In this document: in pieces, positions 18,659-47,194 of the stretch
Layout: every line of letters begins with the position of its first letter
Position numbering within the stretch: position 1 is the first letter of the stretch
NCBI GenBank assembly: GCA_020891255.1
Contig: BQFW01000011.1
Span: 1,798,001-1,862,000 of the forward strand
Length of the DNA stretch: 64,000 nucleotides
DNA from: Entomortierella parvispora E1425
Lineage: Eukaryota; Fungi; Mortierellomycota
Reading direction: 5' to 3'
Program-made: the position numbers and the translations under genes
The notes under the pieces: generated by a model
Database searches by the model: none
What the model saw: only the letters and a program-made list of their open reading frames with translations
Told to the model about the DNA's origin: nothing

Positions 18659-19056
18659 TCGGAATGAGATTCTTTAATGTCTCCAAGCTTTGAGAAAAGT
18701 TGCCTTCTGGACTCCTGCTCTTGTGTGTCCTGATGTCCAAGGTCGGATGGAGGTTTCCTCTTGAAGACCATGCGCTCGACTTGTCCGCAAAAAAAAAAAA
18801 AAAAGAAAGAAAAAAAAGCCAAGCCACTTGCGGTTGCCACCAATATGACTATTTAAGGGTCTAACTCCTGCAGTTTTGGTCTTTGAGGGTGCGCAGGCGG
18901 ATGTTTGGTCGCTGATGCATCGCCGGGCGCCCTGCCTGTTGTTCTCCCGCTGAAGCAGAAACGTGGGAGCAGGAGTAAGCGTGGGCAAAATAGAAGAAGA
19001 TAGAAGAAGATAGAAGATAGAAGATGTATAACGACAGGAAGGATATTACTGCGCAG

Positions 19057-20168
19057 GAGTCATTTGTCCATGTTCTTCGAAGAGAAAGATCTAGGAGACG
19101 GGGGCACAGCAATGGGGCAAGATCATCAGTTGGCCACGTCGTTTACAAAAGACATGATGAAACACAACGCGTCGAGTCAGCTCCTCGGATGTGTTGTGTT
19201 TGTAGTAAAGGAGAAGGATCGCCACTTTGATTTCTAGGTGACTCAAGGATTTTTTTTTTTTTTGGACCCCTACACTTTCATGTGCCATTGAAATTGAGCT
19301 GTGGGTCAGAGAAAAAGAAAAAAACGTTTGTATTCGGAGAATTGTCGTTCGTCCTCTTTGAAGGCAAGAGATGATCAACGAAGGAGGGCTCAACCACAAC
19401 AATACACTTCTCGGACGAAAACACAAAAATAATCTATCATCATTCGAGGAAGGCAACTTTCATTTTCTGTCGAGTCATACACAAATTTTTGGCTGCAGAA
19501 ATCGAAAAAAGATCCATATCTGTGAGCCGTGTGGGCACAGCAAGAAAAAAAAAACGGTCAGGCAACGGCAACGAATGATCGTCCTTCAACACCCTCGTCC
19601 GACTCCCTGGAGCAATTGAAGGCAGCAGTTCTCCTACTCCGCCTTCGCATGGGCAAGAGGATTCCAAGTACGACAAGTACGAAAGAGGGAAACAGTGAGA
19701 CTCACGACCTCCCTCGGAGTTTTTATCTCCTGTGGCAAGATAACGAGAGGCGAAGCAAAATAATTTTCGAACAGTCAGCAGAGACAAGAAAATTGAGGGT
19801 GTCTCGCGGCGGAGTGAGGCCGCAGAACCTGGTGAATCGACCCATGACGGTGTCCTGCCTACTGATTGAGACTGGAGGAATGGCTGTCGAGCTGTGTGGG
19901 TGACCGGGCCTTTGTTTGCTACCAACCCGAGCGCTCTTGCTTCGGACAAACCCTTCGAGTCAGCGAAAAAAAATCCAATCGCAAAAAAACCAGGCACACT
20001 AAACAAAAAAAACATCGAGTCATCCAGTTCCTGGGTCTTATAAAAGGGTGCCCTTGTCCCCCTCCTCTTCCCTCCTCACTTTATCAACAACCACTATACC
20101 CCCACTCTCTCATCCCTATCCCTGATCGGCCTTCAACCAGTCCAACCAAACTCTCTAGAACTGACTCA
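19057..20168. promoter_or_regulatory. Cluster of seven TGACTC/GAGTCA (Gcn4/CpcA-type) sites upstream of the DAHP synthase
   Basis: Hexamers at 19057, 19174, 19239 (TGACTCA), 19472, 19957, 20017 and 20162 (TGACTCA). Confidence 0.6.
20039..20045 (+). promoter_or_regulatory. TATA box (TATAAAA) of the DAHP synthase gene
   Basis: Consensus TATAAAA 170 bp upstream of the ATG at 20209, followed by a pyrimidine-rich leader. Confidence 0.5.
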
Positions 20169-37934: not shown

Positions 37935-37943
37935 CTCTCCTGC
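37935..37943 (+). repeat. Left 9-bp target-site duplication CTCTCCTGC
   Basis: Identical direct copy at 47186-47194, each directly abutting the element terminus. Confidence 0.9.
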
Positions 37944-38081
37944 GGAAGCGTCTATTTGTCGGCCCGTCCGACAAGATCTTATTTGTCGTCCCTGCTCTCA
38001 ATTGCTCTTATTTGTCGTCCGTTCCCCCTTATTTGTCGGCCATGTCCCTATCTGTCGGCCGCTGATTTTAAGTTAACTACA
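37944..38081 (+). repeat. Left terminal inverted repeat
   Basis: CTATTTGTCGGCCCGTCCGACAA (37952-37974) is the exact reverse complement of 47155-47177; further shared blocks ATTGCTCTTATTTGTCG, TCCCCCTTATTTGTCGGC, TTTAAGTTAA and TTAACTACA. Confidence 0.92.
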
Positions 38082-38565
38082 CTAGCATTCCCAAGCGCTT
38101 TGACGCCACAATACGAAACTGGCAAAGCAGCCTGCGTTCTCCCCTACGATCATGACCTTCATCCTACTTCAGTTGTAAATATCACGAAGAAGACTCCGGT
38201 CGTAGGGGCATCTCCATTCTGCTCTTTGAAGTCCTCTCACCCTCTTTTCCTGGTATCCATCCTTTCTGAAGCCTGCAGCTCAAAAAAGCACAACTTTTTT
38301 TTTCTTTTTTTTTTTTTTTTTTTTTTTGGGAGACATGGCTTCAATGATCATCTCTCCTACAATTGTCCGCTGCCTTCAATTGTCCGCTGCATGAAGACAG
38401 TAATACTCCACACTATTAATATAAGTTTATGTTCTTTTATTAGGAAAACAGGGCTTTACAAAAATTATCCATTACCACCTCTCAAGATTGGGATATTATT
38501 CTCCTCTTATTCTCCTCTTTCCTGCTCTAATTCTACACTATCTGCAGGCCGTTGTATGTAGATAT

Positions 38566-41067
38566 CTAGAAGTTGCCTTTGGACTTCTTGGAAGCCATGG
38601 ATAATTCTTGGCTGGACTTGATCCTTTTTGTTGGGACCTTCCCCTTGGGCGGTAAAACTATCGGGTCTTTTACGATCTGCAGGCCCGTCATTTCTTCAAT
38701 TACTTTTTTTCATCTGTGCCTCGGCTTTTTTCATCGCTTTAGCGTAAATAGCTGCCAGCTTTGGATGGTCTGCTCCCATTCGCACCAACTCCTTTGAATT
38801 GCCCTGCAACTCAGCAAAGCGGCTTCGCCGAGCCTGCTCTCTTCGTTCTACAGCGGGGATAGCACCGTACTCGGGGAATAGCTTCGAAGCAGATTCCATA
38901 TACGTCAAGCATGGAGTCCGAACGCGCTTTTCGGACAGAGAAGGATGTCGGGGACCTAGGAAGGCAAGGTCGGGTCCTCTTGTAACCGGAGAAACAGACA
39001 AGAAGGGCCGAGACGAAAGATTGAGGTTCTCGGTGTCTTGCCAGCGCTCTTGGAACCACCGCATGGGCACCAGTTGGATATGGTATCTAAAGGCATGATC
39101 TCTCCGCATCATGTAGAAAAAGTGTTTGCACACAATCCCCACATTCTGCAACTTGAGACATGTGCACAGATATCCTCCATCCCTGAAGAGAAGAACCCAC
39201 GATGCGTCGTTTTCTTCGAGATGAGAAACAAGGTGGATACTCTCAATCTCCGAGTCGCTCAGTTCACTTAGCAAGGCCCCCAATGTCGACAGGCGAACTT
39301 CTTGTCGAGTAGATAGACGTATCTGCCCCTCGTCCTCTGGGTCCCTAAAATATCGTCGCAACTTGGTCAGCCATTACAAAAAAAAAAAAAAGGTTAGATG
39401 GATTATAGTTGACAGGCGACCGTTCCCCAGCATTTACTCTACTTACTTCATCGTGCTCATGGAGTTCTGCTTCATAAGAAAAAGAAGAGGAGATTTCCTC
39501 TTTCATCTTGTTTTGACCGAATCGTCCTAGGAATCGCTCGTTTTCCGATATGACGGCTTGAAAGGTATCATATCCCTTATACCTCTCCTTGACACCGTCT
39601 TTGGAGTCGTCGAGGAAAGCGAGGTACCTATTTTGGATGCTCTCATCCGCGATCTTCTTTTGAATGACTTGGAAGAGTTCATCCAAGCCTGTGTTGCCGT
39701 TCGCCTTGAGTTTGATCAGATGGTGTGCTTTCTCAACTCGCTGTGAAGCCTGTATCCCAAGCGTGAGGAGTGTCCCCACCATGGCTTAGCCCAATAAGGG
39801 CTTCGACTGTAGATATACTGTAGCCTCTTGTCAAGTGGACTCCCGGGGACCAAATCAGGGAATGCAAAGTCCAGAGTTCTCTGCCACTCTTCTTCAAAAT
39901 TTCGCCGAGTTATAGTTCGCTGAGCAATCCAGAATCCGTTTTTGAACTTTTCGTACTCTTCCTTTCCGACCTGGCAGGAGATGTTCGAAAGATTCTTCGA
40001 AAAAGTGCCACAGACAGTTTACCATGTGAGTATTGGGGGACAACTTAATGAGCGCCGACTCAAATGCCTTGTCATCGTCGCTAACGACCACATGCGGATG
40101 CCGATTGCCGTTCGCCTTGAATAAATGGTAAAGAACAAATAAAAAATCTGATCTTGTCTCCTTGCTAAGAAGGGCGCATGCCACAACTCTGGTTGCACCC
40201 TCAGCATCGACAATCGTGGTGACGTTGAGGTGCATTTTGAAGCGGTTGGTGTTGTATGTTGTGTCGTTCATCACTACATCATGGTATCGTGAATAGAGAT
40301 CCCTTTGGAGTGGATCCATCCAAAAGACGCGTCTGATGACCGAATTGTTGTCCGTCTGAACTTTAGCATACCATCGCTCATCCTTCTTGCGGAAACCCGT
40401 CAACATTGCTACCAGACGCTGGGCGTTGTTCGCGCCGTGAGAGCCGGTAGTTCGTCTTGCCATTGCGTTCGACACTCTTCTCCCAGAGAAGTACCGCTCG
40501 GGGTTTCGCCTCTTGAGAACTTCCCTGATAACAGGCATGCTCGCCCCTGCTGCTGAAAGTTCTTGAGCACATTCCCTCATGGGTGTTGTTAACCTCTGTC
40601 TCGAGGGACTAAATATCTCGGCGTGAGCTATCATCTTGTGGTTGTGAGCCGCAGTGTCGTTCTTCCGATAAACGGTACAGTCCTTCCCGTCCTTGCTTGC
40701 TGCACGGAGTTGAATGTACCATTTGCAGTCGCAGCGAATCGAGGTCTTATTTCTTTCCAACTCAGGTACAGAGGTCTTCTTAGGACTATGCTTCCTCCCT
40801 TTTGTACATTCTAGAACCTCTGTAAAAAAGGGACTGCGTTAGTCGTTCGGCCTTGCCTCGCACACGCCAGCATTGCAAGGAAACGTACTCATCCACTCGC
40901 GTGATAGCTTTTTGCTTGAGGCGATTCGAATATCAAATCCACACGAAAGGGACCACTGTCGAACGGCATTTATGGCATCCGAGAAAGAATTGAAGATTTG
41001 AGAGTCCAGTTCCTCGGGCAAAGGAGTGTGTGGATTCTAGAAATGGCAGAACAACATCAGACACAGC

Positions 41068-41098
<31 letters not shown>

Positions 41099-42930
41099 GT
41101 GCAACGAACCTTCTCGATAGGAACGAAAACCCTTTCATGTTCTGTATCCTGGAAATTCTTGGAGTCCTGGTGGTCCTCACAATCAGATTCTTCTTCATAC
41201 CAGGGTTCGCGCTCATCTTCACGAGCATCAGCCTCCCCTCCACACGGGCTTTCATAGTTGGAATAGAGATTGCCCTCAAGATCCCGATCGTCGTAATCAT
41301 GGTCGTTGTCATCAAGGTCGTCATCATAATCCTCCGATGGACAATGAAAGCGATTATCGCTGAGGAGATATCGGTCGTAGTAGATATAAAGGTCTTCCCC
41401 ATCCTGAGCATCAAGGATGTCAGGGGTTCCCTCTCTTTTCTCCTTCTCCTTCTCTTCAATAACAGGGATGTCATGATCCCCGCCCTTCCCTTGAACAACC
41501 GGGATATCGGAAGCGATATTGACAACTCTGTCGGCAACTCTTTCATCGCGCCTTTTTATGGCGGTATTGTGAGTCACCTGAGTTATTCCGTGAGATTTTC
41601 TGATGATAAAAGGTGACTGTTGAGACTGGTCTGGAGGGGTGGGGTCCTCGATAAACAAGGAAGACACGCCCTGCAAGGACAATTGGACAGTATGTAAGTA
41701 ATTGGACTCAGTAGAAAGTGATCAACGGCAACATATACGTACTTTGTTCGTCCAGTCTTGTCCGGTCAGAACATACATATACCACAGCCGATGGTTCTTG
41801 CTAGTGGCCACCGTCCAGGCTTTTATGAGATGAAATGGCCGGCACTCGCTCTCAATAACATTAAGAGCAATGACACCACAGGAGCCTCCATCGATGCCTT
41901 GTTGGGGTACCTCCAATTCATGGACTTTCTTGAATGCCGTATATTCTGGCACCATGCAATGTTTCAACATCCTGGCAATGGTGCGACCAACCTCCTCACC
42001 TAATTTATCCGATTGTCCCCCATCCAGCGAGTGGCCGAAGGACGTTCGTTTGGCGGCAAAGTCGATGACCACAGGAGCCCAATGGCGTCCAATGTTGACA
42101 ATCGCAAATGCCTTCCTTTCGGCAATGGCGCAATGAAGGATGGCGGTCTTGATGTAGTCCCACTGCTTCTTTTGTTGCTCCCGCTCATGGACATTCAGAT
42201 TAATACGAAGGGCTGTCGAAGGAACGAAGATATCATCGCCGCTGGTTTGAGCTGCAAACTCTTTCATAACCGCGTCAATGACTTGTCCCGACAGCCACTC
42301 TTCGTGCCTAAGCTGGAGGAGGTCGGTGATACTGGTGACGGTACCATTGTAAGCCTTAAAGCCGTGTCTAAGGATAAAAACGGCCAGATTAGATGTGTTA
42401 AAAACAAACTGCCATGGCCAGGGATTATGGATGTACAGTATAACTCACCCCAAAATGTTGGGACTCTGAAGAAGAATGGACCTCATTTTCCGAACGACTT
42501 CCGCTCCGATCTTAACAGGGCCATTTAACCAAGTCAACATATCACGAAGCAAAGCTGACATATCCATTAGGTCATGGATTTGCTTCATGGCCTGAAGGGC
42601 GGGAAAGGAGACGAATCCCACCTTGCCAATAAGTACGACACCCGGTCGAGAATCGTTACTAATCAGTTCTATCGCGGCCGCGACTGATGCTGGGTGAGGG
42701 ATCGGCCTGTTGATACTCAGGTCAGATAGTGTCACTTGAAGCTCGTCGAAGTAGGTCGCAAGTCGCTCTTCGTTGGTGAAGAACGTGGGAGTGACTTTCG
42801 TAAGGACAGGTGGGAACTCCATATGGATTAACTCCCAGCCCGTGAGATGTCTCTGCCACCAGAATTCAAGAAGATCCGCGTCGTCGAGAAGCTCGAGCGA
42901 GCCGTTAACATGGCTTTCAGGGAGCGACAT
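38566..42930 (-). pseudogene. Spliced Ulp1-like protease / FAR1 / MULE transposase / SWIM fusion gene with three frameshifts; exons 42930-42449, 42367-41743, 41670-41110, 41036-40889, 40819-39447, 39361-38566
   Basis: Ulp1: LRHEEWLSGQVID, HWAPVVIDF, PQQGIDGGSCGVIAL. FAR1: FNSFSDAINAVRQW..GFDIRI...CTKG...RCDCKW...HNH. MULE: VMNDTTYNTN, VSDDDKAF, CLWH, QRVEKAH. SWIM: CTCLKLQNVGIVCKH. All five introns are GT-AG and in phase. Frameshifts at ~40000, ~39780 and ~38705. Confidence 0.85.
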
Positions 42931-43390
42931 GAGGTGAGGTTTCCAAGCAAAAGGGTATTTGGTGGTTAAGGGAGATAAGAGGTGGTGGTGGAGGTTCAGT
43001 TGGCCGCAAGGCCTTTTAGTGCCTTAAACGCGTAACGGCTGCCACAAAAAAAAACGTCAAGTACTGATTTTTGGCCGATTCTCACGGTGCTCACAAGAAA
43101 TTACCCCTGAGCCCCTGAACCTTCTTCTCGTTTTTGAGTCGAAGGTGCCTACTTTCGCACTTCACTCTTGAATTTATTTCTCGTGTTCAAGTTCTTGCCC
43201 AAAAAGAAACATTCCGCTGAGCAATAAATACGGCACATACTTTCGTCTTTTCTACTACTATTATCTGCACCTGCCTTACTTAGTTACAATCAACCCCATT
43301 ACTGTGAATCTTCAGGTGAGTTAAGTACACCTCTTGTCCGTGGAACTCACTCTCAATTGCTCTAACTTCCTTTTTTTTATTGGACAGTAG

Positions 43391-44431
43391 ATGGACGAGG
43401 ATCACCCTTTCTTTGCCGAGCTTAGCCGCCATGTTGCATTGGCCTACGACCTCCCTTTTGATGCTCCCTGGTTAGCTCTCTGCCCTGAAAAGACGTATCG
43501 GTTCACTTGGACTGAGCTCCTCCAGGTTGCCAATGCCTTGGCTCTTCCAATAACCTTAAAGTTGTCAAATGGAGCGATCGTTCCAAGACTGCAGGCGCTA
43601 TGCATGCTTTGCTTTCGATTGAGTTATCCTCATCTTATCAAGGATATGGCCGCTCTCTTTTCTCGTGATTCTCCTTTTGTGTCGCACGCAATCAAGACCA
43701 TTAACGAGTACATCCTTTCCGAATGGAAGCATCTTTTGGAGTTTGACCACACCCGCCTACGAGATGAATATCTGGAGGGTTTAGCAGCGCGAGTTCAGTT
43801 TATGAAAGGGAGGCTGACAAACTGCTGGGGATTTGTTTCCTGGACTCATATTGAGATCTGCCGACCTAAGGAAAGGCCAAACCTGACATATTCTACCCAG
43901 AAACAGATGCACTCAATGAAATATCAGTCGGTTTGCTGTCCAGATGGTATAATTGCCCATTTGAGCGGTCCTCATCCGGGAGCAGAAGCTGACACGGTCA
44001 CTTTGACCAAGTCTTGTCTTCCAATCATTTTGAATGCCCACTGTCATAACACTCTTGGCGCTCCGATGGTCATTTATGGTGATGGGAATTATCCTGATTG
44101 CTTTCAAGTTTGTCGTCCATATCGCGGTCCAGTCCTCAGCAAGTCCGAGATCCGCTTCAACTTATCCATGAGACGTCCCCTTCTTTGTGCTGACAAAGGA
44201 TTTGACTTCATTGACAATAACTGGAGCTGGTTGGCCCATAGTAACATTCTGAAAATGAGACAGACTAAGTACTACATCGTGTCTGCTCTGTTCGCCAATA
44301 TTCTCACTTGCATTCGTAGAGGGAACAGCGTCACCTCGTATTTCGGGATGGATCCGCCAACTCTTGAAAATTACCTTACTCCAAAACACCAGTGGATGCC
44401 AGAATCCCTTCCAAGTCAAGATTTATTGTAA
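43391..44431 (+). CDS. PIF/Harbinger-type (DDE_Tnp_4-like) transposase homologue with degenerate catalytic motif
   Basis: Intact 346-aa ORF: ALCMLCFRLSYP, NCWGFVSWT..ICRP, HSMKYQSVCCPDGIIAHLSGP, IYGDGNYP, FNLSM, GNSVTSYFGMDPPTLENYL. A 5'-UTR intron (GTGAGT 43316, CTAAC 43362, TAG 43390) precedes the ATG. Confidence 0.85.
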   Translation: MDEDHPFFAELSRHVALAYDLPFDAPWLALCPEKTYRFTWTELLQVANALALPITLKLSNGAIVPRLQALCMLCFRLSYPHLIKDMAALFSRDSPFVSHAIKTINEYILSEWKHLLEFDHTRLRDEYLEGLAARVQFMKGRLTNCWGFVSWTHIEICRPKERPNLTYSTQKQMHSMKYQSVCCPDGIIAHLSGPHPGAEADTVTLTKSCLPIILNAHCHNTLGAPMVIYGDGNYPDCFQVCRPYRGPVLSKSEIRFNLSMRRPLLCADKGFDFIDNNWSWLAHSNILKMRQTKYYIVSALFANILTCIRRGNSVTSYFGMDPPTLENYLTPKHQWMPESLPSQDLL

Positions 44432-44454
44432 TAAATTGTATCACTGCATGGTCG

Positions 44455-46075
44455 CTAGCTTTCTGGTCGCCGTGGTGCTGCGGCTGTGGCCAGAGATATA
44501 CTGGGTTGAAATGTTGTCTGAGGGCGCGCCAGCATTGGAGGCCATTGTATGGAGGTCGAGTGAGGCTGAGGCTGAGGTAGGCCAGAAGTCCTTGAGTAAG
44601 ATTTCCATACAATATCCTGTAAATCACGGATTTCATTTCTGAATGTGAGAAACGTTCCATGCATTTCTGACCTCAAATCCGACAGCACTGAAATGACAGC
44701 AACGGTATTCCTATTCAAATCGTCGATATTCCTATTCAAATCGTCGATACTCCTATTCAAATCGTCGATCTTGGATACTGTGTTCCTGCCGAGATCTTCA
44801 ATGATGGTTGTGTTGTCTGTCATGTTCCTTCTAAGTTCCTTAATTCTAGCGGTAGTCTCAATCGCTACGACCTGTCTTATTGACTGCACTTCGTCCGCTA
44901 TTCTCCTTTGCTCCTTCGCAAATCCCCGAGGCATCCGCATTGTCTTTTGTTGTTTTTGTGCTCCGAGGTGGTGTCACAGAGCGGTGTTTGGGCGAAGGTA
45001 CCATGGCTGACAACGTAGCTGGAGGGTAGAGTAGCTCTTGTTGCTGCTGATGAATGGGCAAAGCAACTCCACGATGACTTTTCGTATCGCCTGGGGCAGC
45101 TCGAACATGCGTGACGTCGGCCCTATTGGAGCTTCGTGTTTCGCTATCATATTGTTCGCCCGCTGAATGTCCATCCTCATCCTCATTCTCTTCTTCCTCG
45201 TCTTCCGGCTCATCGTCGTTGTCATCGTCTTCACTGCCGCGCGATACAGTATCATCAAATCTTAGTTTCTTGATTCTCCGTCTGCGATCCTCTGTGACAA
45301 GATTCTGTCGGGTTGCTGTTGCGGGAGATGCCACGCGCGCCCTCTCTTCCGCCGTGAGTTCCGATGTTTCCTGCTTGATCCTTAATAAAGTTCGGTCGTA
45401 ATCGCGCAAAAGACGACAGAGCTCCAACAACCGAGTTGAGAATGCGAGATCCACCCCAGTCGCGGAAGTGGCTAATTTCTCATAGGCGTTGTAGTCAGCA
45501 CAGAGTCTGCCAACAGCCGAATATAGGGCACCTGCTGTAACGCCTCTCAGACTCGGCTCGGCACGCTCTAGCTCTGTAGAAAGCTGGGTATACAATTCGC
45601 CGCCTCTCGTCAGACTCATGCCTCTCAGTTCATCCTGCGCACTAGCACAGAATTGTTGGAGTCGCTGAACAAGGAATTGGACGGCCAAGAATATCCTCCG
45701 TTGGTTTCCACCACTGGGAAGGGCTTTTAGTCCACAGTACCTCTTTGACCCAGTGGCAGGCATTTCAGTTGAGAGGTCAGCTAAATGAGGAAAAGGGTAG
45801 TTCAGTGAAATGCCAGGAGAGCAAAGGAATCTCAATTGACTCAATTAATTACCTTCCCGAATGCTGTCTTCCACTGAAAGAACCCTACCGGACTGGAGTG
45901 AATCGACATCTTCAGGATCCTCAAATATATTCCGGTAGTGCTTCAGATGGACAGTCTGTTCTCTCGAGAGCGTCGCAGAAGCAGGTTGTGGGGATGGATT
46001 TCGTTTTTGAGACATCTCGTTGTGAGTGATGGATTCGTAATAAAATGAAGCAATTGTTGTGTTGGAGGGCTGCAT
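44455..46075 (-). CDS. Putative Myb/SANT-like partner protein of the Harbinger-type module with acidic tract and C-terminal coiled coil; exons 46075(or 46015)-45853, 45780-45002, 44943-44455
   Basis: First intron has GTAATT donor and TTTAG acceptor in phase. Segment GELYTQLSTEL...VTAGALYSAVGRLCADY...ATSATGVD...LLELCRLL fits the helix pattern of Harbinger ORF2 proteins, with the usual Trp absent. Converges on the transposase-like ORF with a 23-bp gap. The second intron (58 nt, AAG acceptor) is weaker. Confidence 0.6.
44707..44769. repeat. 21-bp tandem repeat x3 encoding IDDLNR(S/N) heptads on the minus strand
   Basis: ATTCCTATTCAAATCGTCGAT x2 plus ACTCCTATTCAAATCGTCGAT. Confidence 0.9.
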
Positions 46076-47040
46076 CGCGTGGTCACGTGACTATAGTCGA
46101 AGATGCCCTGGTGGTGCAGCGGCCCCGAGCCGCCCCGTGCCTGGACCATGAGGAGGGAAAGACGGGCTAGCCGCTCCGAAGGCGCTCTCGTCGAGGTCGA
46201 GCCCTCTCTCTTTGTCGTTCGAACCTGGCGTGGTCATATTCGCAAATAGATGGTTTCTGTTTTTTTTTTTTTTGGTTCTCTTCCGGGTTTTCCTGAAGTT
46301 TTCTCGCCTGCTCGTATGGAACCAGTGTCCATGTAGCAGAAGCAGCAGCGAAGAAATAGTAGGAAAGAAGTATGTGACAAAGACAACTTTCCCCTATCTT
46401 TCTCCCATTGCACCCTTTTACACCAGGGTAGTGTTGGCTTAGAGGCAGATCCAAACAACCTTGGCTGTAGTTTTGCACCTTGTTCATCATACAAGTGTGC
46501 CTTCTGGGTCAATTGCAGATACTACGGCAGTAGTCAATGGATATGATATTAGTGAAGGACAATGGCATGGCTTTCAACAGCCTTCGCGTACTTTGAAAAT
46601 GAGAATTCGCTTCCCAAATCCCAAACGTCTAGAATGCAGTTTAGCAGTTCAAAGAAAACAAAGATGATGAGGAAGACACCTTCCCTACAAGAGATACCGT
46701 ATTGAGAATCCAAAGGTCTCTTTTTAGTGATAGACTGCATCATTTTTAGATGCTTCTTTTTGGTACTAACCGAGCTTCAACTGGCTAAAATGATGAACAA
46801 GCGAAAGAGCTGCAAATACGATGACCTTGTCAAAATCTCGCCACGCTCACATCCGTACTTGTCATGATTTTTCTTAGTTCGAGAGTGAAAACGTCTTTTC
46901 ATATTCGTCCAAAGCTGATGATCCCTTCTCTGAGGGCCTTGTAACTGGATCAGTACGCGTGTCCAGCTATTTAACATCAACCTCTTTTTGATTCCAACTT
47001 CTATCCAACTACACTTTCAACTTTTGTTCTCTAGAATATT

Positions 47041-47185
47041 TGTAGTTAAGTGGGGCTCAATTTAACTTAAATAAAGCGACCGACATATACGGGAGCAGCC
47101 GACAAATAAGGGGGAGCAGCCGACAAATAAGAGCAATGAGCCGACAAATAAGAATTGTCGGACGGGCCGACAAATAGTCTAGTCC
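47041..47185 (-). repeat. Right terminal inverted repeat
   Basis: Contains CGACAAATA at 47100, 47121, 47142 and 47168; inverted match to 37944-38081. Confidence 0.92.
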
Positions 47186-47194
47186 CTCTCCTGC
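47186..47194 (+). repeat. Right 9-bp target-site duplication CTCTCCTGC
   Basis: Identical to 37935-37943. Confidence 0.9.

What the first reader, a model, noticed from the sequence alone, without database searches (positions are those of the whole stretch)
37944..47185. Compound Mutator element carrying a SUMO-protease-fused transposase and a captured nuclease-dead Harbinger module
Seen: a perfect 9-bp TSD (CTCTCCTGC), GGA...TCC termini and ~135-bp TIRs enclose three intron-containing genes: a Ulp1-FAR1-MULE-SWIM fusion (minus), a Harbinger-type transposase homologue (plus) and a Myb/SANT-like coiled-coil gene (minus). The MULE D-D-E and CxxH residues are present, and I found no internal TIR pair for the Harbinger part, so it moves as cargo. 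Established: 9-bp TSDs typify MULEs; plant Kaonashi MULEs carry Ulp1-like genes; VANDAL MULEs carry the anti-silencing factor VANC; Harbinger-derived transposase/Myb pairs (ALP1/ALP2, HDP1/HDP2, HARBI1/NAIF1) have been co-opted as chromatin regulators. Inference: a fungal MULE family that has domesticated a second superfamily's gene pair, perhaps as an anti-silencing or targeting module alongside a deSUMOylase. This is the best candidate for an undescribed system in the window.
Basis: partly seen in the sequence, partly recalled or inferred. Interest (0 to 1): 0.9.

Follow-up and report, generated by a model that had tools for sequence, protein, structure and literature searches.

The report
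Mutator transposon carrying dead Harbinger genes
A 9.2-kb jumping gene of the Mutator type in the soil fungus Entomortierella parvispora carries, besides its own protease-fused transposase, a gene pair taken from a different transposon family (Harbinger). The pair's cutting enzyme is inactivated but still conserved, so one transposon appears to have put another's proteins to its own use.

Summary
Window 37944-47185 is one copy of a 9.24-kb Mutator-like element (MULE) in Entomortierella parvispora E1425, on contig BQFW01000011. I recovered three more copies that are 99.8-99.9% identical. Two are full length with their own 9- and 10-bp target duplications. One is split by an LTR retrotransposon. 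All carry the Harbinger pair, so the composite moves as a unit. Illumina word depth suggests 5-6 copies.

Gene 1 splices into one 1,334-aa reading frame with the domain order Ulp1/C48, FAR1-like, MULE DDE, SWIM.

Gene 2 is a Harbinger-type DDE_Tnp_4 protein. It keeps 30 of 37 family-conserved positions, but its changes cluster in the catalytic motifs (D150S, R264L, E268D).

Gene 3 is the convergent partner gene. Its Myb/SANT identity is only a weak lead.

An old degraded relative (L005) shares the E-to-D change. Against it, both cargo genes give dN/dS of about 0.3, and 0.03 in the partner's core, so the cargo is not neutral.

I found no internal Harbinger TIRs. The anti-silencing function, SUMO specificity and expression are untested. 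Frameshifts in the window copy are probably Nanopore homopolymer errors.

First-stage notes of this scan describe other copies of this element in the same genome. My verdict is a new variant of a known kind (a multi-gene MULE).

The parts
37935..37943 (.). Left target-site duplication, CTCTCCTGC
   Evidence: Identical to 47186-47194. Sister copies have different TSDs: GACACTCCC and ATCTTCTCT(C).
37944..38076 (+). Left terminal inverted repeat, starting GGAAGCG, with 4 subterminal TTATTTGTCGNCC motifs
   Evidence: 82.7% identity to the right TIR over 127 aligned positions.
38566..42930 (-). Gene 1: the Ulp1(C48)-acidic linker-FAR1-like-MULE DDE-SWIM fusion transposase. Predicted exons are 42930-42449, 42367-41743, 41670-41110, 41036-40866, 40817-39447 and 39361-38566. 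The window copy carries homopolymer indels at 40000, 39778 and 38704.
   Evidence: Five GT..AG introns (81, 72, 73, 48 and 85 nt) give one 1,334-aa ORF when sister-copy homopolymer lengths are used. A Fusarium MULE transposase aligns across exon junctions 3/4 and 4/5. Exons 3-4 have no Met upstream of the FAR1-like domain. Pfam MULE E=4e-19.
41743..42367 (-). Exon 2 of gene 1, holding the Ulp1-like C48 peptidase core. His, Gln and Cys are kept; the triad Asp is replaced by His.
   Evidence: Pfam PF02902 E=0.0017, below the gathering cut-off. Atlas feature score is 0.96, and 91 of 100 hits are Peptidase_C48. Alignment to SENP1.
39447..40817 (-). Exon 5 of gene 1, holding the C-terminal half of the FAR1-like domain and the MULE DDE core (D796, D858, E972 and the CxxH motif of the spliced protein)
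42931..43390 (.). 460-bp divergent intergenic region between gene 1 and gene 2, a possible shared promoter. It includes a putative 5'-UTR intron of gene 2 at about 43316-43388.
   Evidence: Read from the sequence. No RNA data were available.
43391..44431 (+). Gene 2: a Harbinger/PIF-type DDE_Tnp_4 protein of 346 aa with an intact ORF and altered catalytic motifs (D150S, G151W, R264L, V267A, E268D)
   Evidence: Pfam E=1e-13. Alignments to 14 and to 123 homologues. The protein is identical in three copies and 99.7% identical in the fourth.
44455..46075 (-). Gene 3: the convergent Harbinger-partner-like gene. It has a helical N-terminal domain, an acidic stretch and a C-terminal coiled coil. Exon 1 runs 46075 (or 46016) to 45853, the intron 45852-45781, and exon 2 45780-44455. 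The extra T at 44945 in the window copy splits the frame.
   Evidence: GenBank models P0158 and P0159. Illumina contigs and L004 lack the extra T. dN/dS is 0.34 overall and 0.03 in the core. Myb/SANT is only an Atlas lead at 0.80-0.84.
44703..44772 (-). Three tandem 21-nt units that encode IDDLNRN-type heptads in the coiled coil of gene 3
47062..47185 (-). Right terminal inverted repeat, ending ...TAGTCC, with 4 subterminal motifs
47186..47194 (.). Right target-site duplication, CTCTCCTGC

Best explanation
This is one copy of a young, probably still active, autonomous Mutator-like element of Entomortierella parvispora. About 5 near-identical copies exist.

Shown:
- The whole 9.24-kb unit transposes as one piece, leaving 9-10-bp target duplications.
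- It has 125-133-bp TIRs that each hold four 13-bp subterminal motifs.
- It carries three genes.
- Gene 2 is a Harbinger-type nuclease homologue. Its fold-defining residues are kept, but the first catalytic Asp and the R-x3-E motif are replaced.
- Gene 2 and its convergent partner gene have no termini of their own.
- Both genes have evolved under purifying selection since before the split from an older relative that already had the altered E motif.

Inferred:
- Transposition is carried out by gene 1, a 1,334-aa protein. Its FAR1-like domain binds the subterminal motifs and its MULE DDE core cuts and joins. An N-terminal Ulp1-like cysteine protease domain is fused to it.
- The pair came from a Harbinger that inserted into an ancestral MULE, lost its ends and its catalysis, and was kept.
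- The two proteins probably still form the transposase-partner complex typical of Harbingers. That complex would now act as a non-catalytic DNA- or chromatin-binding accessory factor that helps the MULE propagate, through regulation, targeting or resistance to silencing. Which of these applies is unknown.

My confidence is about 0.9 for the shown structural part and about 0.4 for the inferred accessory role. The figure given is for the whole statement.
For: Mobility as a unit:
- L004 and L008 are full-length copies, 99.8-99.9% identical, with different TSDs. L006 is the same element split by a 5.07-kb LTR retrotransposon.
- An Illumina contig spans the Ulp1-Harbinger junction. Word depth is even across the stretch laid (41700-45150: Ulp1 exon, gene 2, 3' part of gene 3) at 453-484, against 83 for the single divergent relative.

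MULE identity:
- TSD, TIRs and Pfam MULE E=4e-19.

Fusion gene:
- One 1,334-aa ORF with five canonical introns.
- A Fusarium MULE transposase aligns across exon junctions 3/4 and 4/5.
- There is no start codon between the Ulp1 exons and the FAR1-like domain.

Disabled nuclease:
- All 14 closest homologues, including P0001 at 57% identity, keep D, HD and VEW. The window protein has S, AD and ADK at those sites.
- It keeps 30 of 37 conserved columns, and its 7 changes cluster in the catalytic motifs.
- For the PIF/Harbinger element Ping, mutating one DDE residue drastically reduces transposition, as cited in PMC4671723.

Harbinger origin:
- The homologues' loci have the same convergent partner ORF 13-30 nt downstream.

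Selection:
- dN/dS is 0.32 for gene 2 (P=1.5e-4) and 0.34 for gene 3 (P=1.2e-6), with 0.03 in the core of gene 3.
- L005 shares the LCADKGF motif, so the E-to-D change predates the split.
Against: - No expression or splicing data could be obtained. No RNA run was listed, and GenBank does not annotate gene 2 in any copy.
- The partner's Myb/SANT identity is unproven.
- No relatives of the composite were found outside this genome, so long-term retention rests on one comparison, with L005.
- In L005 the nuclease homologue is truncated and frameshifted while the partner gene is intact. The pair is therefore not always kept together.
- D150S cannot be dated, because L005 lacks that part.
- Some of the measured constraint may date from before the capture, or reflect use in trans.
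- The window lineage has evolved faster than P0001: it is 5-9 identity points further from the outgroups.
- The triad Asp of the C48 domain is His.
- Homopolymer uncertainty means the intactness of any single copy is not established.
Confidence: 0.6

Rival explanations
1. Passive passenger. A Harbinger inserted into the MULE, lost its ends, and is simply carried along. The intact ORFs and dN/dS below 1 would reflect selection before the capture, or while its proteins still served autonomous Harbingers in trans, plus the youth of the current burst.
For: - The copies are nearly identical, so they form one recent lineage.
- The nuclease homologue decayed in L005.
- The window lineage evolved faster than P0001.
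- Gene 2 is unannotated in GenBank.
- No cross-species data are available.
Against: - L005 shares the degenerate E motif and adjoins sequence from the MULE left end. The comparison that gives dN/dS of about 0.3 is therefore between two post-capture, post-inactivation lineages.
- The changes in gene 2 cluster in catalytic motifs while the scaffold residues are kept.
- A protein with S at the first catalytic position and L and D in the R-x3-E motif cannot serve a Harbinger as its nuclease.
Confidence: 0.25
2. Host-beneficial genes that happen to sit in a transposon. The pair, or the partner gene alone, would already be a host chromatin factor, like ALP1/ALP2 or HDP1/HDP2. The MULE copies would merely duplicate it.
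For: In the degraded, immobile L005 fragment the partner gene (EMPS_03913) stays intact. Its indels are all multiples of 3 (27, 3, 3). The adjacent nuclease remnant has seven indels, none a multiple of 3.
Against: - The main-lineage genes exist only inside mobile copies at different loci.
- No fixed single-copy orthologue was found in other taxa.
Confidence: 0.08
3. An independently mobile Harbinger nested in a MULE, which by chance is present in this copy.
For: The convergent transposase-partner layout is that of autonomous relatives.
Against: - No TIR pair and no 3-bp TSD surround the module.
- All four copies have it at the same place.
- Illumina depth over the module equals that over the Ulp1 exon laid with it, so there are no solo copies.
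- The catalytic residues are lost.
Confidence: 0.02
4. Assembly chimera of two repeats in a Nanopore assembly.
For: The assembly is Nanopore-based and has residual homopolymer errors in this repeat (PMC8759367).
Against: - Three full-length copies on different contigs have clean, different TSDs.
- An independent Illumina contig crosses the junction (record 1, 41700-44067).
Confidence: 0.01

Closest known systems
Ulp1-bearing MULEs (plant Kaonashi/KI-MULEs, CUMULE; MuDR transposases with a Ulp1 domain in hydra and lancelet)
   Same: The MULE-encoded protein contains a C48/Ulp1-like domain. This is reported for Mutator elements of hydra, lancelet, Arabidopsis, maize, rice and melon (PMC2836005). 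The C48 protease is also used as a recognised accessory domain of fungal DNA transposons (PMC5751038).
   Different: Here the domain sits at the N-terminus of a FAR1-MULE-SWIM transposase in a Mortierellomycotina fungus. Its triad Asp is His. The element also carries a second-superfamily gene pair.
Multi-gene MULEs: MuDR (mudrA/mudrB), Mutyl (mutB), VANDAL21/Hiun (vanA/vanB/vanC)
   Same: These are autonomous MULEs with extra element-specific ORFs that serve the element. VANC is an anti-silencing factor and mutB binds DNA (PMC6446971).
   Different: Their accessory genes are orphan or host-derived, with no homology to transposases. Here the accessory genes are recognisably the two genes of a PIF/Harbinger element. 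No similarity to VANC or mudrB was sought or seen.
Domesticated Harbinger pairs: ALP1/ALP2 (PRC2), HDP1/HDP2 (IDM histone acetyltransferase complex), HARBI1/NAIF1, and the insect and vertebrate co-domestications
   Same: A transposase-derived protein and its partner are retained together. In ALP1 the DDE triad is lost (DGA). Selection is purifying after domestication (PMC4671723, PMC7282668, PMC5339849, PMC9710019, PMC9392472).
   Different: Those are fixed, immobile host genes. Here the pair is multi-copy and resides inside an active transposon of another superfamily, so the beneficiary is presumably the MULE. The partner's Myb/SANT domain is not demonstrated, and no chromatin partner is known.
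Autonomous PIF/Harbinger elements
   Same: DDE_Tnp_4 protein plus a convergent second ORF. The closest relatives are P0001 (57% identity) and P0002-P0007 (35-45% identity), all with an intact DDE.
   Different: No TIRs and no 3-bp TSD. D150S, R264L and E268D. It is not mobile on its own.
Pack-MULEs and other gene-capturing transposons (for example Fanzor genes carried by various eukaryotic TEs)
   Same: A MULE carries foreign coding sequence between its TIRs.
   Different: Pack-MULEs are non-autonomous and carry host gene fragments. Here two complete genes from another TE sit in an autonomous element and are under selection.

Membership tests
Mutator/MULE superfamily | 8-11-bp target-site duplication | tested here: met
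   TSDs of 9, 9 and 10 bp in three copies.
Mutator/MULE superfamily | Long terminal inverted repeats | tested here: met
   About 125-133 bp, 83% alike, with 4 subterminal motifs per end.
Mutator/MULE superfamily | Transposase with a MULE DDE domain and D, D, E and CxxH residues | tested here: met
   PF10551 E=4e-19. D796, D858, E972 and CLWH are present in the spliced protein. In the window copy the frame is broken by homopolymer indels that are probably assembly errors.
Mutator/MULE superfamily | SWIM or other zinc finger C-terminal of the DDE core | tested here: inconclusive
   A CxC...CxH motif can be read in the sequence, but Pfam gives no SWIM hit.
Ulp1/C48 peptidase (as in KI-MULEs) | C48 fold | tested here: met
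   Pfam E=0.0017, below the gathering cut-off. Atlas score 0.96, with 91 of 100 hits in C48. Alignment to SENP1.
Ulp1/C48 peptidase (as in KI-MULEs) | His-Asp-Cys triad plus oxyanion Gln | tested here: inconclusive
   His, Gln and Cys align with those of SENP1. The Asp position is His, with an Asp three residues later (weak alignment, E=0.07).
Ulp1/C48 peptidase (as in KI-MULEs) | SUMO-specific isopeptidase activity | not testable with these tools
   Needs a biochemical assay. C48 enzymes also act on NEDD8 and ubiquitin.
PIF/Harbinger transposon | DDE_Tnp_4 transposase homology | tested here: met
   PF13359 E=1e-13. 2,799 homologues found.
PIF/Harbinger transposon | Intact DDE catalytic residues | tested here: not met
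   D150S and E268D, and R264L in the R-x3-E motif.
PIF/Harbinger transposon | Own TIRs and a 3-bp (TWA) TSD | tested here: not met
   No flanking inverted repeat above chance level.
PIF/Harbinger transposon | Second ORF encoding a Myb/SANT-like DNA-binding protein | tested here: inconclusive
   A convergent partner ORF sits in the same position as in relatives. Atlas features point to Myb/SANT or MADF clusters at 0.80-0.84. There are no Pfam or PDB hits, and the AlphaFold pLDDT is 44.
Domesticated Harbinger pair (ALP1/ALP2, HDP1/HDP2, HARBI1/NAIF1) | Fixed, immobile host locus | tested here: not met
   All main-lineage copies lie inside a mobile MULE at different loci. Only the L005 partner gene looks immobilised.
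Domesticated Harbinger pair (ALP1/ALP2, HDP1/HDP2, HARBI1/NAIF1) | Purifying selection after loss of transposition function | tested here: met
   dN/dS of 0.32 and 0.34 against a relative that shares the altered E motif.
Domesticated Harbinger pair (ALP1/ALP2, HDP1/HDP2, HARBI1/NAIF1) | Physical interaction of the two proteins and association with a chromatin complex | not testable with these tools
   No multimer prediction or experiment was available.
VANDAL-type anti-silencing MULE | VANC-like sequence-specific anti-silencing protein | not tested
   No VANC sequence was compared. The analogy is functional only.

The most novel reading that the evidence does not exclude
One transposon has domesticated another. 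An active MULE keeps a catalytically disabled Harbinger nuclease and its partner as its own accessory complex, for targeting, regulation or escape from silencing. A spun-off copy of the partner gene (EMPS_03913 in L005) is being retained by the host after the rest of that copy decayed. That would capture TE-to-TE and TE-to-host domestication of the same module in a single genome.
Probability: 0.4. Interest if true: 0.8.

Novelty: new variant of a known kind. Interest (0 to 1): 0.62.

Why it matters
Harbinger transposase and partner pairs have been domesticated by hosts again and again as chromatin regulators (ALP1/2, HDP1/2, HARBI1/NAIF1). How a dead nuclease becomes useful is still unclear. 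Here the same kind of pair sits, under selection, inside a young and probably active transposon of another superfamily. The fungus has a small genome, and its sequencing data are public. This gives a tractable case for asking two questions: what a non-catalytic Harbinger complex does, and whether the first beneficiary of such modules can be another transposon rather than the host. It also adds to the picture of MULEs as carriers of accessory genes outside plants.

Tried and rejected
- Internal TIRs around the Harbinger module: only chance-level pairs.
As a result the two MULE frameshift sites and the flank depth could not be checked against reads.
- RNA runs: none was listed, so there is no splicing or expression evidence.
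- Word-based protein searches: one Harbinger relative outside the genome, only distant MULE relatives, and no outside relative of the partner.
- Contexts of the closest Harbinger homologues: all lie on contigs of 1.4-3.9 kb, too short to show whether they sit in MULEs.
- Two metagenome scans, one with the Harbinger alignment and one with the MULE exon: nothing found.
- Myb/SANT test of gene 3:
  - Pfam at E up to 10 found nothing.
  - The PDB profile search gave only noise, protein kinase hits at E above 0.6.
  - AlphaFold on a 2-sequence alignment gave pLDDT 44, too poor for a fold search.
- The C-terminal coiled coil compared with the partner ORF of L002: not significant.
- The subterminal motif TATTTGTCG is absent from the Harbinger relatives' contigs. 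This is uninformative, because their ends are not covered.
- The bacterial-type promoter scan is irrelevant to a eukaryote.
- The SAKe6BR hit to the C48 exon is a designed repeat protein and was treated as spurious.
- The 422-aa DDE_Tnp_4 ORF near L004 is unrelated at tblastn level.


Full report
**Observation**

The stretch 37944-47185 is bounded by a perfect 9-bp direct repeat, CTCTCCTGC, at 37935-37943 and 47186-47194. It starts GGAAGCG and ends TAGTCC. The ends are imperfect inverted repeats of about 125-133 bp, 83% alike over 127 aligned positions, and the innermost 23 nt are 100% complementary. Each end holds four copies of TTATTTGTCGNCC. The window has 8 matches, all in the TIRs, against 0.22 expected by chance.

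**Where it comes from and how many copies there are**

A protein search with the MULE exon returned a GenBank protein of Entomortierella parvispora. Its locus and three others fetched through the partner gene were compared with the window.

- L007 is the window itself (100% over 20 kb). The window is therefore contig BQFW01000011 of assembly GCA_020891255.1, strain E1425.
- L004 (contig 6) and L008 (contig 7) hold full-length copies, 99.8-99.9% identical. Identity stops exactly at 37944 and 47185. Their TSDs are GACACTCCC and ATCTTCTCT(C).
- L006 (contig 1) holds the same element split at 41047-41051 by a 5,067-bp LTR retrotransposon with a 5-bp duplication.

All four copies encode the Harbinger-like protein: it is identical in three and 99.7% identical in L006.

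Logan contigs of an Illumina run of the same strain include one contig running from the Ulp1 exon into the Harbinger gene (41700-44067). Word depth is even at 453-484 across the 41700-45150 stretch that was laid. A divergent variant has depth 83. The ratio is about 5.5, which fits the four copies found here plus one more that first-stage notes describe. The composite therefore transposes as a unit, and did so recently.

**Assembly quality**

Among the four copies there are about eight substitutions but more than ten length differences, all in homopolymer runs. The genome was assembled from Nanopore reads and polished with Nanopolish and Pilon (PMC8759367).

- At 44945 three of four assembled copies have T4. 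The only Illumina contig there (depth 453) and L004 have T3, which joins the two halves of gene 3 into one frame.
- At 43046 the Illumina contig disagrees with two of the copies.

I therefore read the frameshifts of the window copy at 40000, 39778, 38704 and 44945 as probable assembly errors.

**Gene 1**

I used the homopolymer lengths found in sister copies and five GT..AG introns of 81, 72, 73, 48 and 85 nt. With these the minus strand from 42930 to about 38566 gives one uninterrupted ORF of 1,334 aa. Its order is:

- an unassigned N-terminal part;
- a C48 domain (His256, Cys323);
- an acidic linker;
- a FAR1-like domain (about 571-670);
- the MULE core (D796, D858, CLWH at 881, E972);
- a CxC...CxH motif (1136-1150).

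A Fusarium MULE transposase aligns from residue 497 to 869, across the junctions of exons 3/4 and 4/5. Exons 3 and 4 contain no Met upstream of the FAR1-like domain, so translation has to start in the Ulp1 exons. Intron 2 is a 72-nt GTACGT...CAG intron that keeps the frame. The fusion is therefore well supported by sequence logic, but not by RNA.

The C48 assignment rests on three results: a sub-threshold Pfam hit, an Atlas feature score of 0.96 with 91 of 100 hits in that family, and an alignment to SENP1. In that alignment His, Gln and Cys match, but the triad Asp is His. Activity and substrate are open, and 'SUMO protease' is an assumption.

**Gene 2**

The 346-aa ORF is a clear PIF/Harbinger-type protein, with 2,799 homologues at E<=1e-3. 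The 14 closest relatives include a metagenomic protein 57% identical (P0001). All of them keep the DGT/DCT Asp, the HD motif and the R-x3-E Glu. The window protein has S, AD and L...AD at these places.

Against 123 homologues it keeps 30 of the 37 columns that are conserved in at least 85% of them. The seven changes are D150S, G151W, Q163P, G169T, R264L, V267A and E268D. P0001 keeps 35 of the 37. So the scaffold is kept and the catalytic motifs are hit. One DDE mutation is reported to cripple the Harbinger-type element Ping (cited in PMC4671723). 'Nuclease-dead' is thus a sound inference, though untested.

The window lineage is also 5-9 identity points further from every outgroup than P0001 is. 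That means faster evolution.

**Gene 3**

GenBank models P0159 and P0158 and my reading agree on two exons with a 72-nt intron. The protein has a helical N-terminal region, an acidic stretch and a C-terminal coiled coil that includes three 21-nt tandem units.

It lies tail to tail 23 nt from gene 2. The closest Harbinger homologues have the same convergent ORF 13-30 nt downstream. That layout, rather than any domain hit, is the evidence that it is the Harbinger ORF1-type partner.

The Myb/SANT label remains a lead:

- Pfam and PDB searches found nothing.
- AlphaFold gave pLDDT 44.
- The Atlas features point to Myb/SANT or MADF clusters only at 0.80-0.84, below the level at which such hits count.

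**Is the cargo neutral?**

L005 (contig 5) holds an old, degraded relative. It is 86% identical over 43871-46015, joined directly to a piece of the MULE left end (38086-38303, 69%) with remnants of the TIR motif. It has no right TIR. It thus descends from a composite.

- Its nuclease remnant shares LCADKGF, so the E-to-D state is older than the split. It now has seven indels, none a multiple of three.
- Its partner gene (EMPS_03913) is intact, with in-frame indels only.
- Against the window lineage, dN/dS is 0.34 for the partner (dS 0.17; 0.03 in the 70-codon core; P=1.2e-6). It is 0.32 for the 161 alignable codons of the nuclease homologue (dS 0.30; P=1.5e-4).
- The partner's intron is 78% identical against 92% for its exons.

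Both genes have therefore been under purifying selection after the E motif was lost. When D150S arose cannot be told, because L005 lacks that part.

**Mechanism**

These steps are shown: the unit moves as a MULE; the pair has no ends of its own; the nuclease homologue lacks canonical catalytic residues; and both cargo genes are constrained.

These steps are inferred:

- Gene 1 is the working transposase.
- The pair entered as a nested Harbinger.
- The pair still forms the complex that Harbinger transposases make with their partners.
- The complex now serves the MULE.

Genes 1 and 2 diverge from a 460-bp spacer, which would allow co-regulation. I cannot choose between targeting, regulation and anti-silencing. 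Nothing here supports anti-silencing specifically.

**Comparison with what is known**

- Ulp1 domains in Mutator transposases are known from hydra, lancelet and several plants (PMC2836005). C48 is a recognised accessory domain of fungal DNA transposons (PMC5751038).
- Extra ORFs in MULEs are known: mudrB, mutB, vanB and vanC (PMC6446971).
- Co-domesticated Harbinger pairs are known as host genes (PMC4671723, PMC7282668, PMC5339849, PMC9710019, PMC9392472).
- In seven literature searches I found no report of a MULE that carries a Harbinger-derived pair.

I therefore rate it a new variant of a known kind, the multi-gene MULE, and not a new category.

**Earlier notes**

First-stage notes of this scan describe the same composite on other pieces of this genome, at 9,241, 9,237, 9,227 and 14,331 letters. 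They also describe other multi-gene MULEs there. Three of those lengths match L008, L004 and L006. The notes were leads only. The copies used here were found independently through protein look-ups.

Noticed in passing
L005:9941-11543 (contig BQFW01000005): The partner gene of an old, degraded relative of the element (EMPS_03913, 488 aa) is intact, with in-frame indels only. The adjoining nuclease remnant is truncated and frameshifted, and the MULE parts are almost gone. It may be a partner gene on its way to host domestication.
   Followed up: partly
L006:14969-20035 (contig BQFW01000001), equal to window position 41047-41051: A 5,067-bp LTR retrotransposon (RVT_1, RNase H, integrase) with a 5-bp target duplication has inserted into one copy of the element, around intron 3 of gene 1.
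   Followed up: partly
window 38704, 39778, 40000, 40908, 43046, 44945, 46099, 46260, 46721: Homopolymer length differences between otherwise identical copies. At 44945 and 43046 the Illumina contigs contradict the assembled state. Residual Nanopore errors in repeats break GenBank gene models, which differ from copy to copy (341, 386, 579 and 580 aa for the same gene).
   Followed up: partly
window 43391-44431 and the same ORF in L004, L006, L008: The 346-aa Harbinger-like ORF is not annotated in any of the four copies in the GenBank record, although it is the longest uninterrupted ORF of the element.
   Followed up: no
L004:18512-19780 (minus strand): A separate 422-aa DDE_Tnp_4 ORF, unrelated at tblastn level to gene 2. 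GenBank merges it into a 776-aa model with an upstream Pro/Ala-rich, membrane-like segment. It may be another Harbinger-derived gene.
   Followed up: no
L008:510-8176 and 18810-19370: A cluster of repeated 178-186-aa genes with weak Inhibitor_I66 and RicinB-lectin hits flanks the copy on contig 7.
   Followed up: no
TSDs of three copies (window 37935-37943; L004; L008): All three target duplications are pyrimidine-rich on one strand (CTCTCCTGC, GACACTCCC, ATCTTCTCTC). This hints at a CT-rich target preference.
   Followed up: no
window 46084-46491 (minus strand), equal to L004:4050-4457: A 135-aa ATG ORF lies just upstream of gene 3 in the better-polished copy. It is low in complexity, and its status is unclear: an upstream exon, a uORF or noise.
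   Followed up: no
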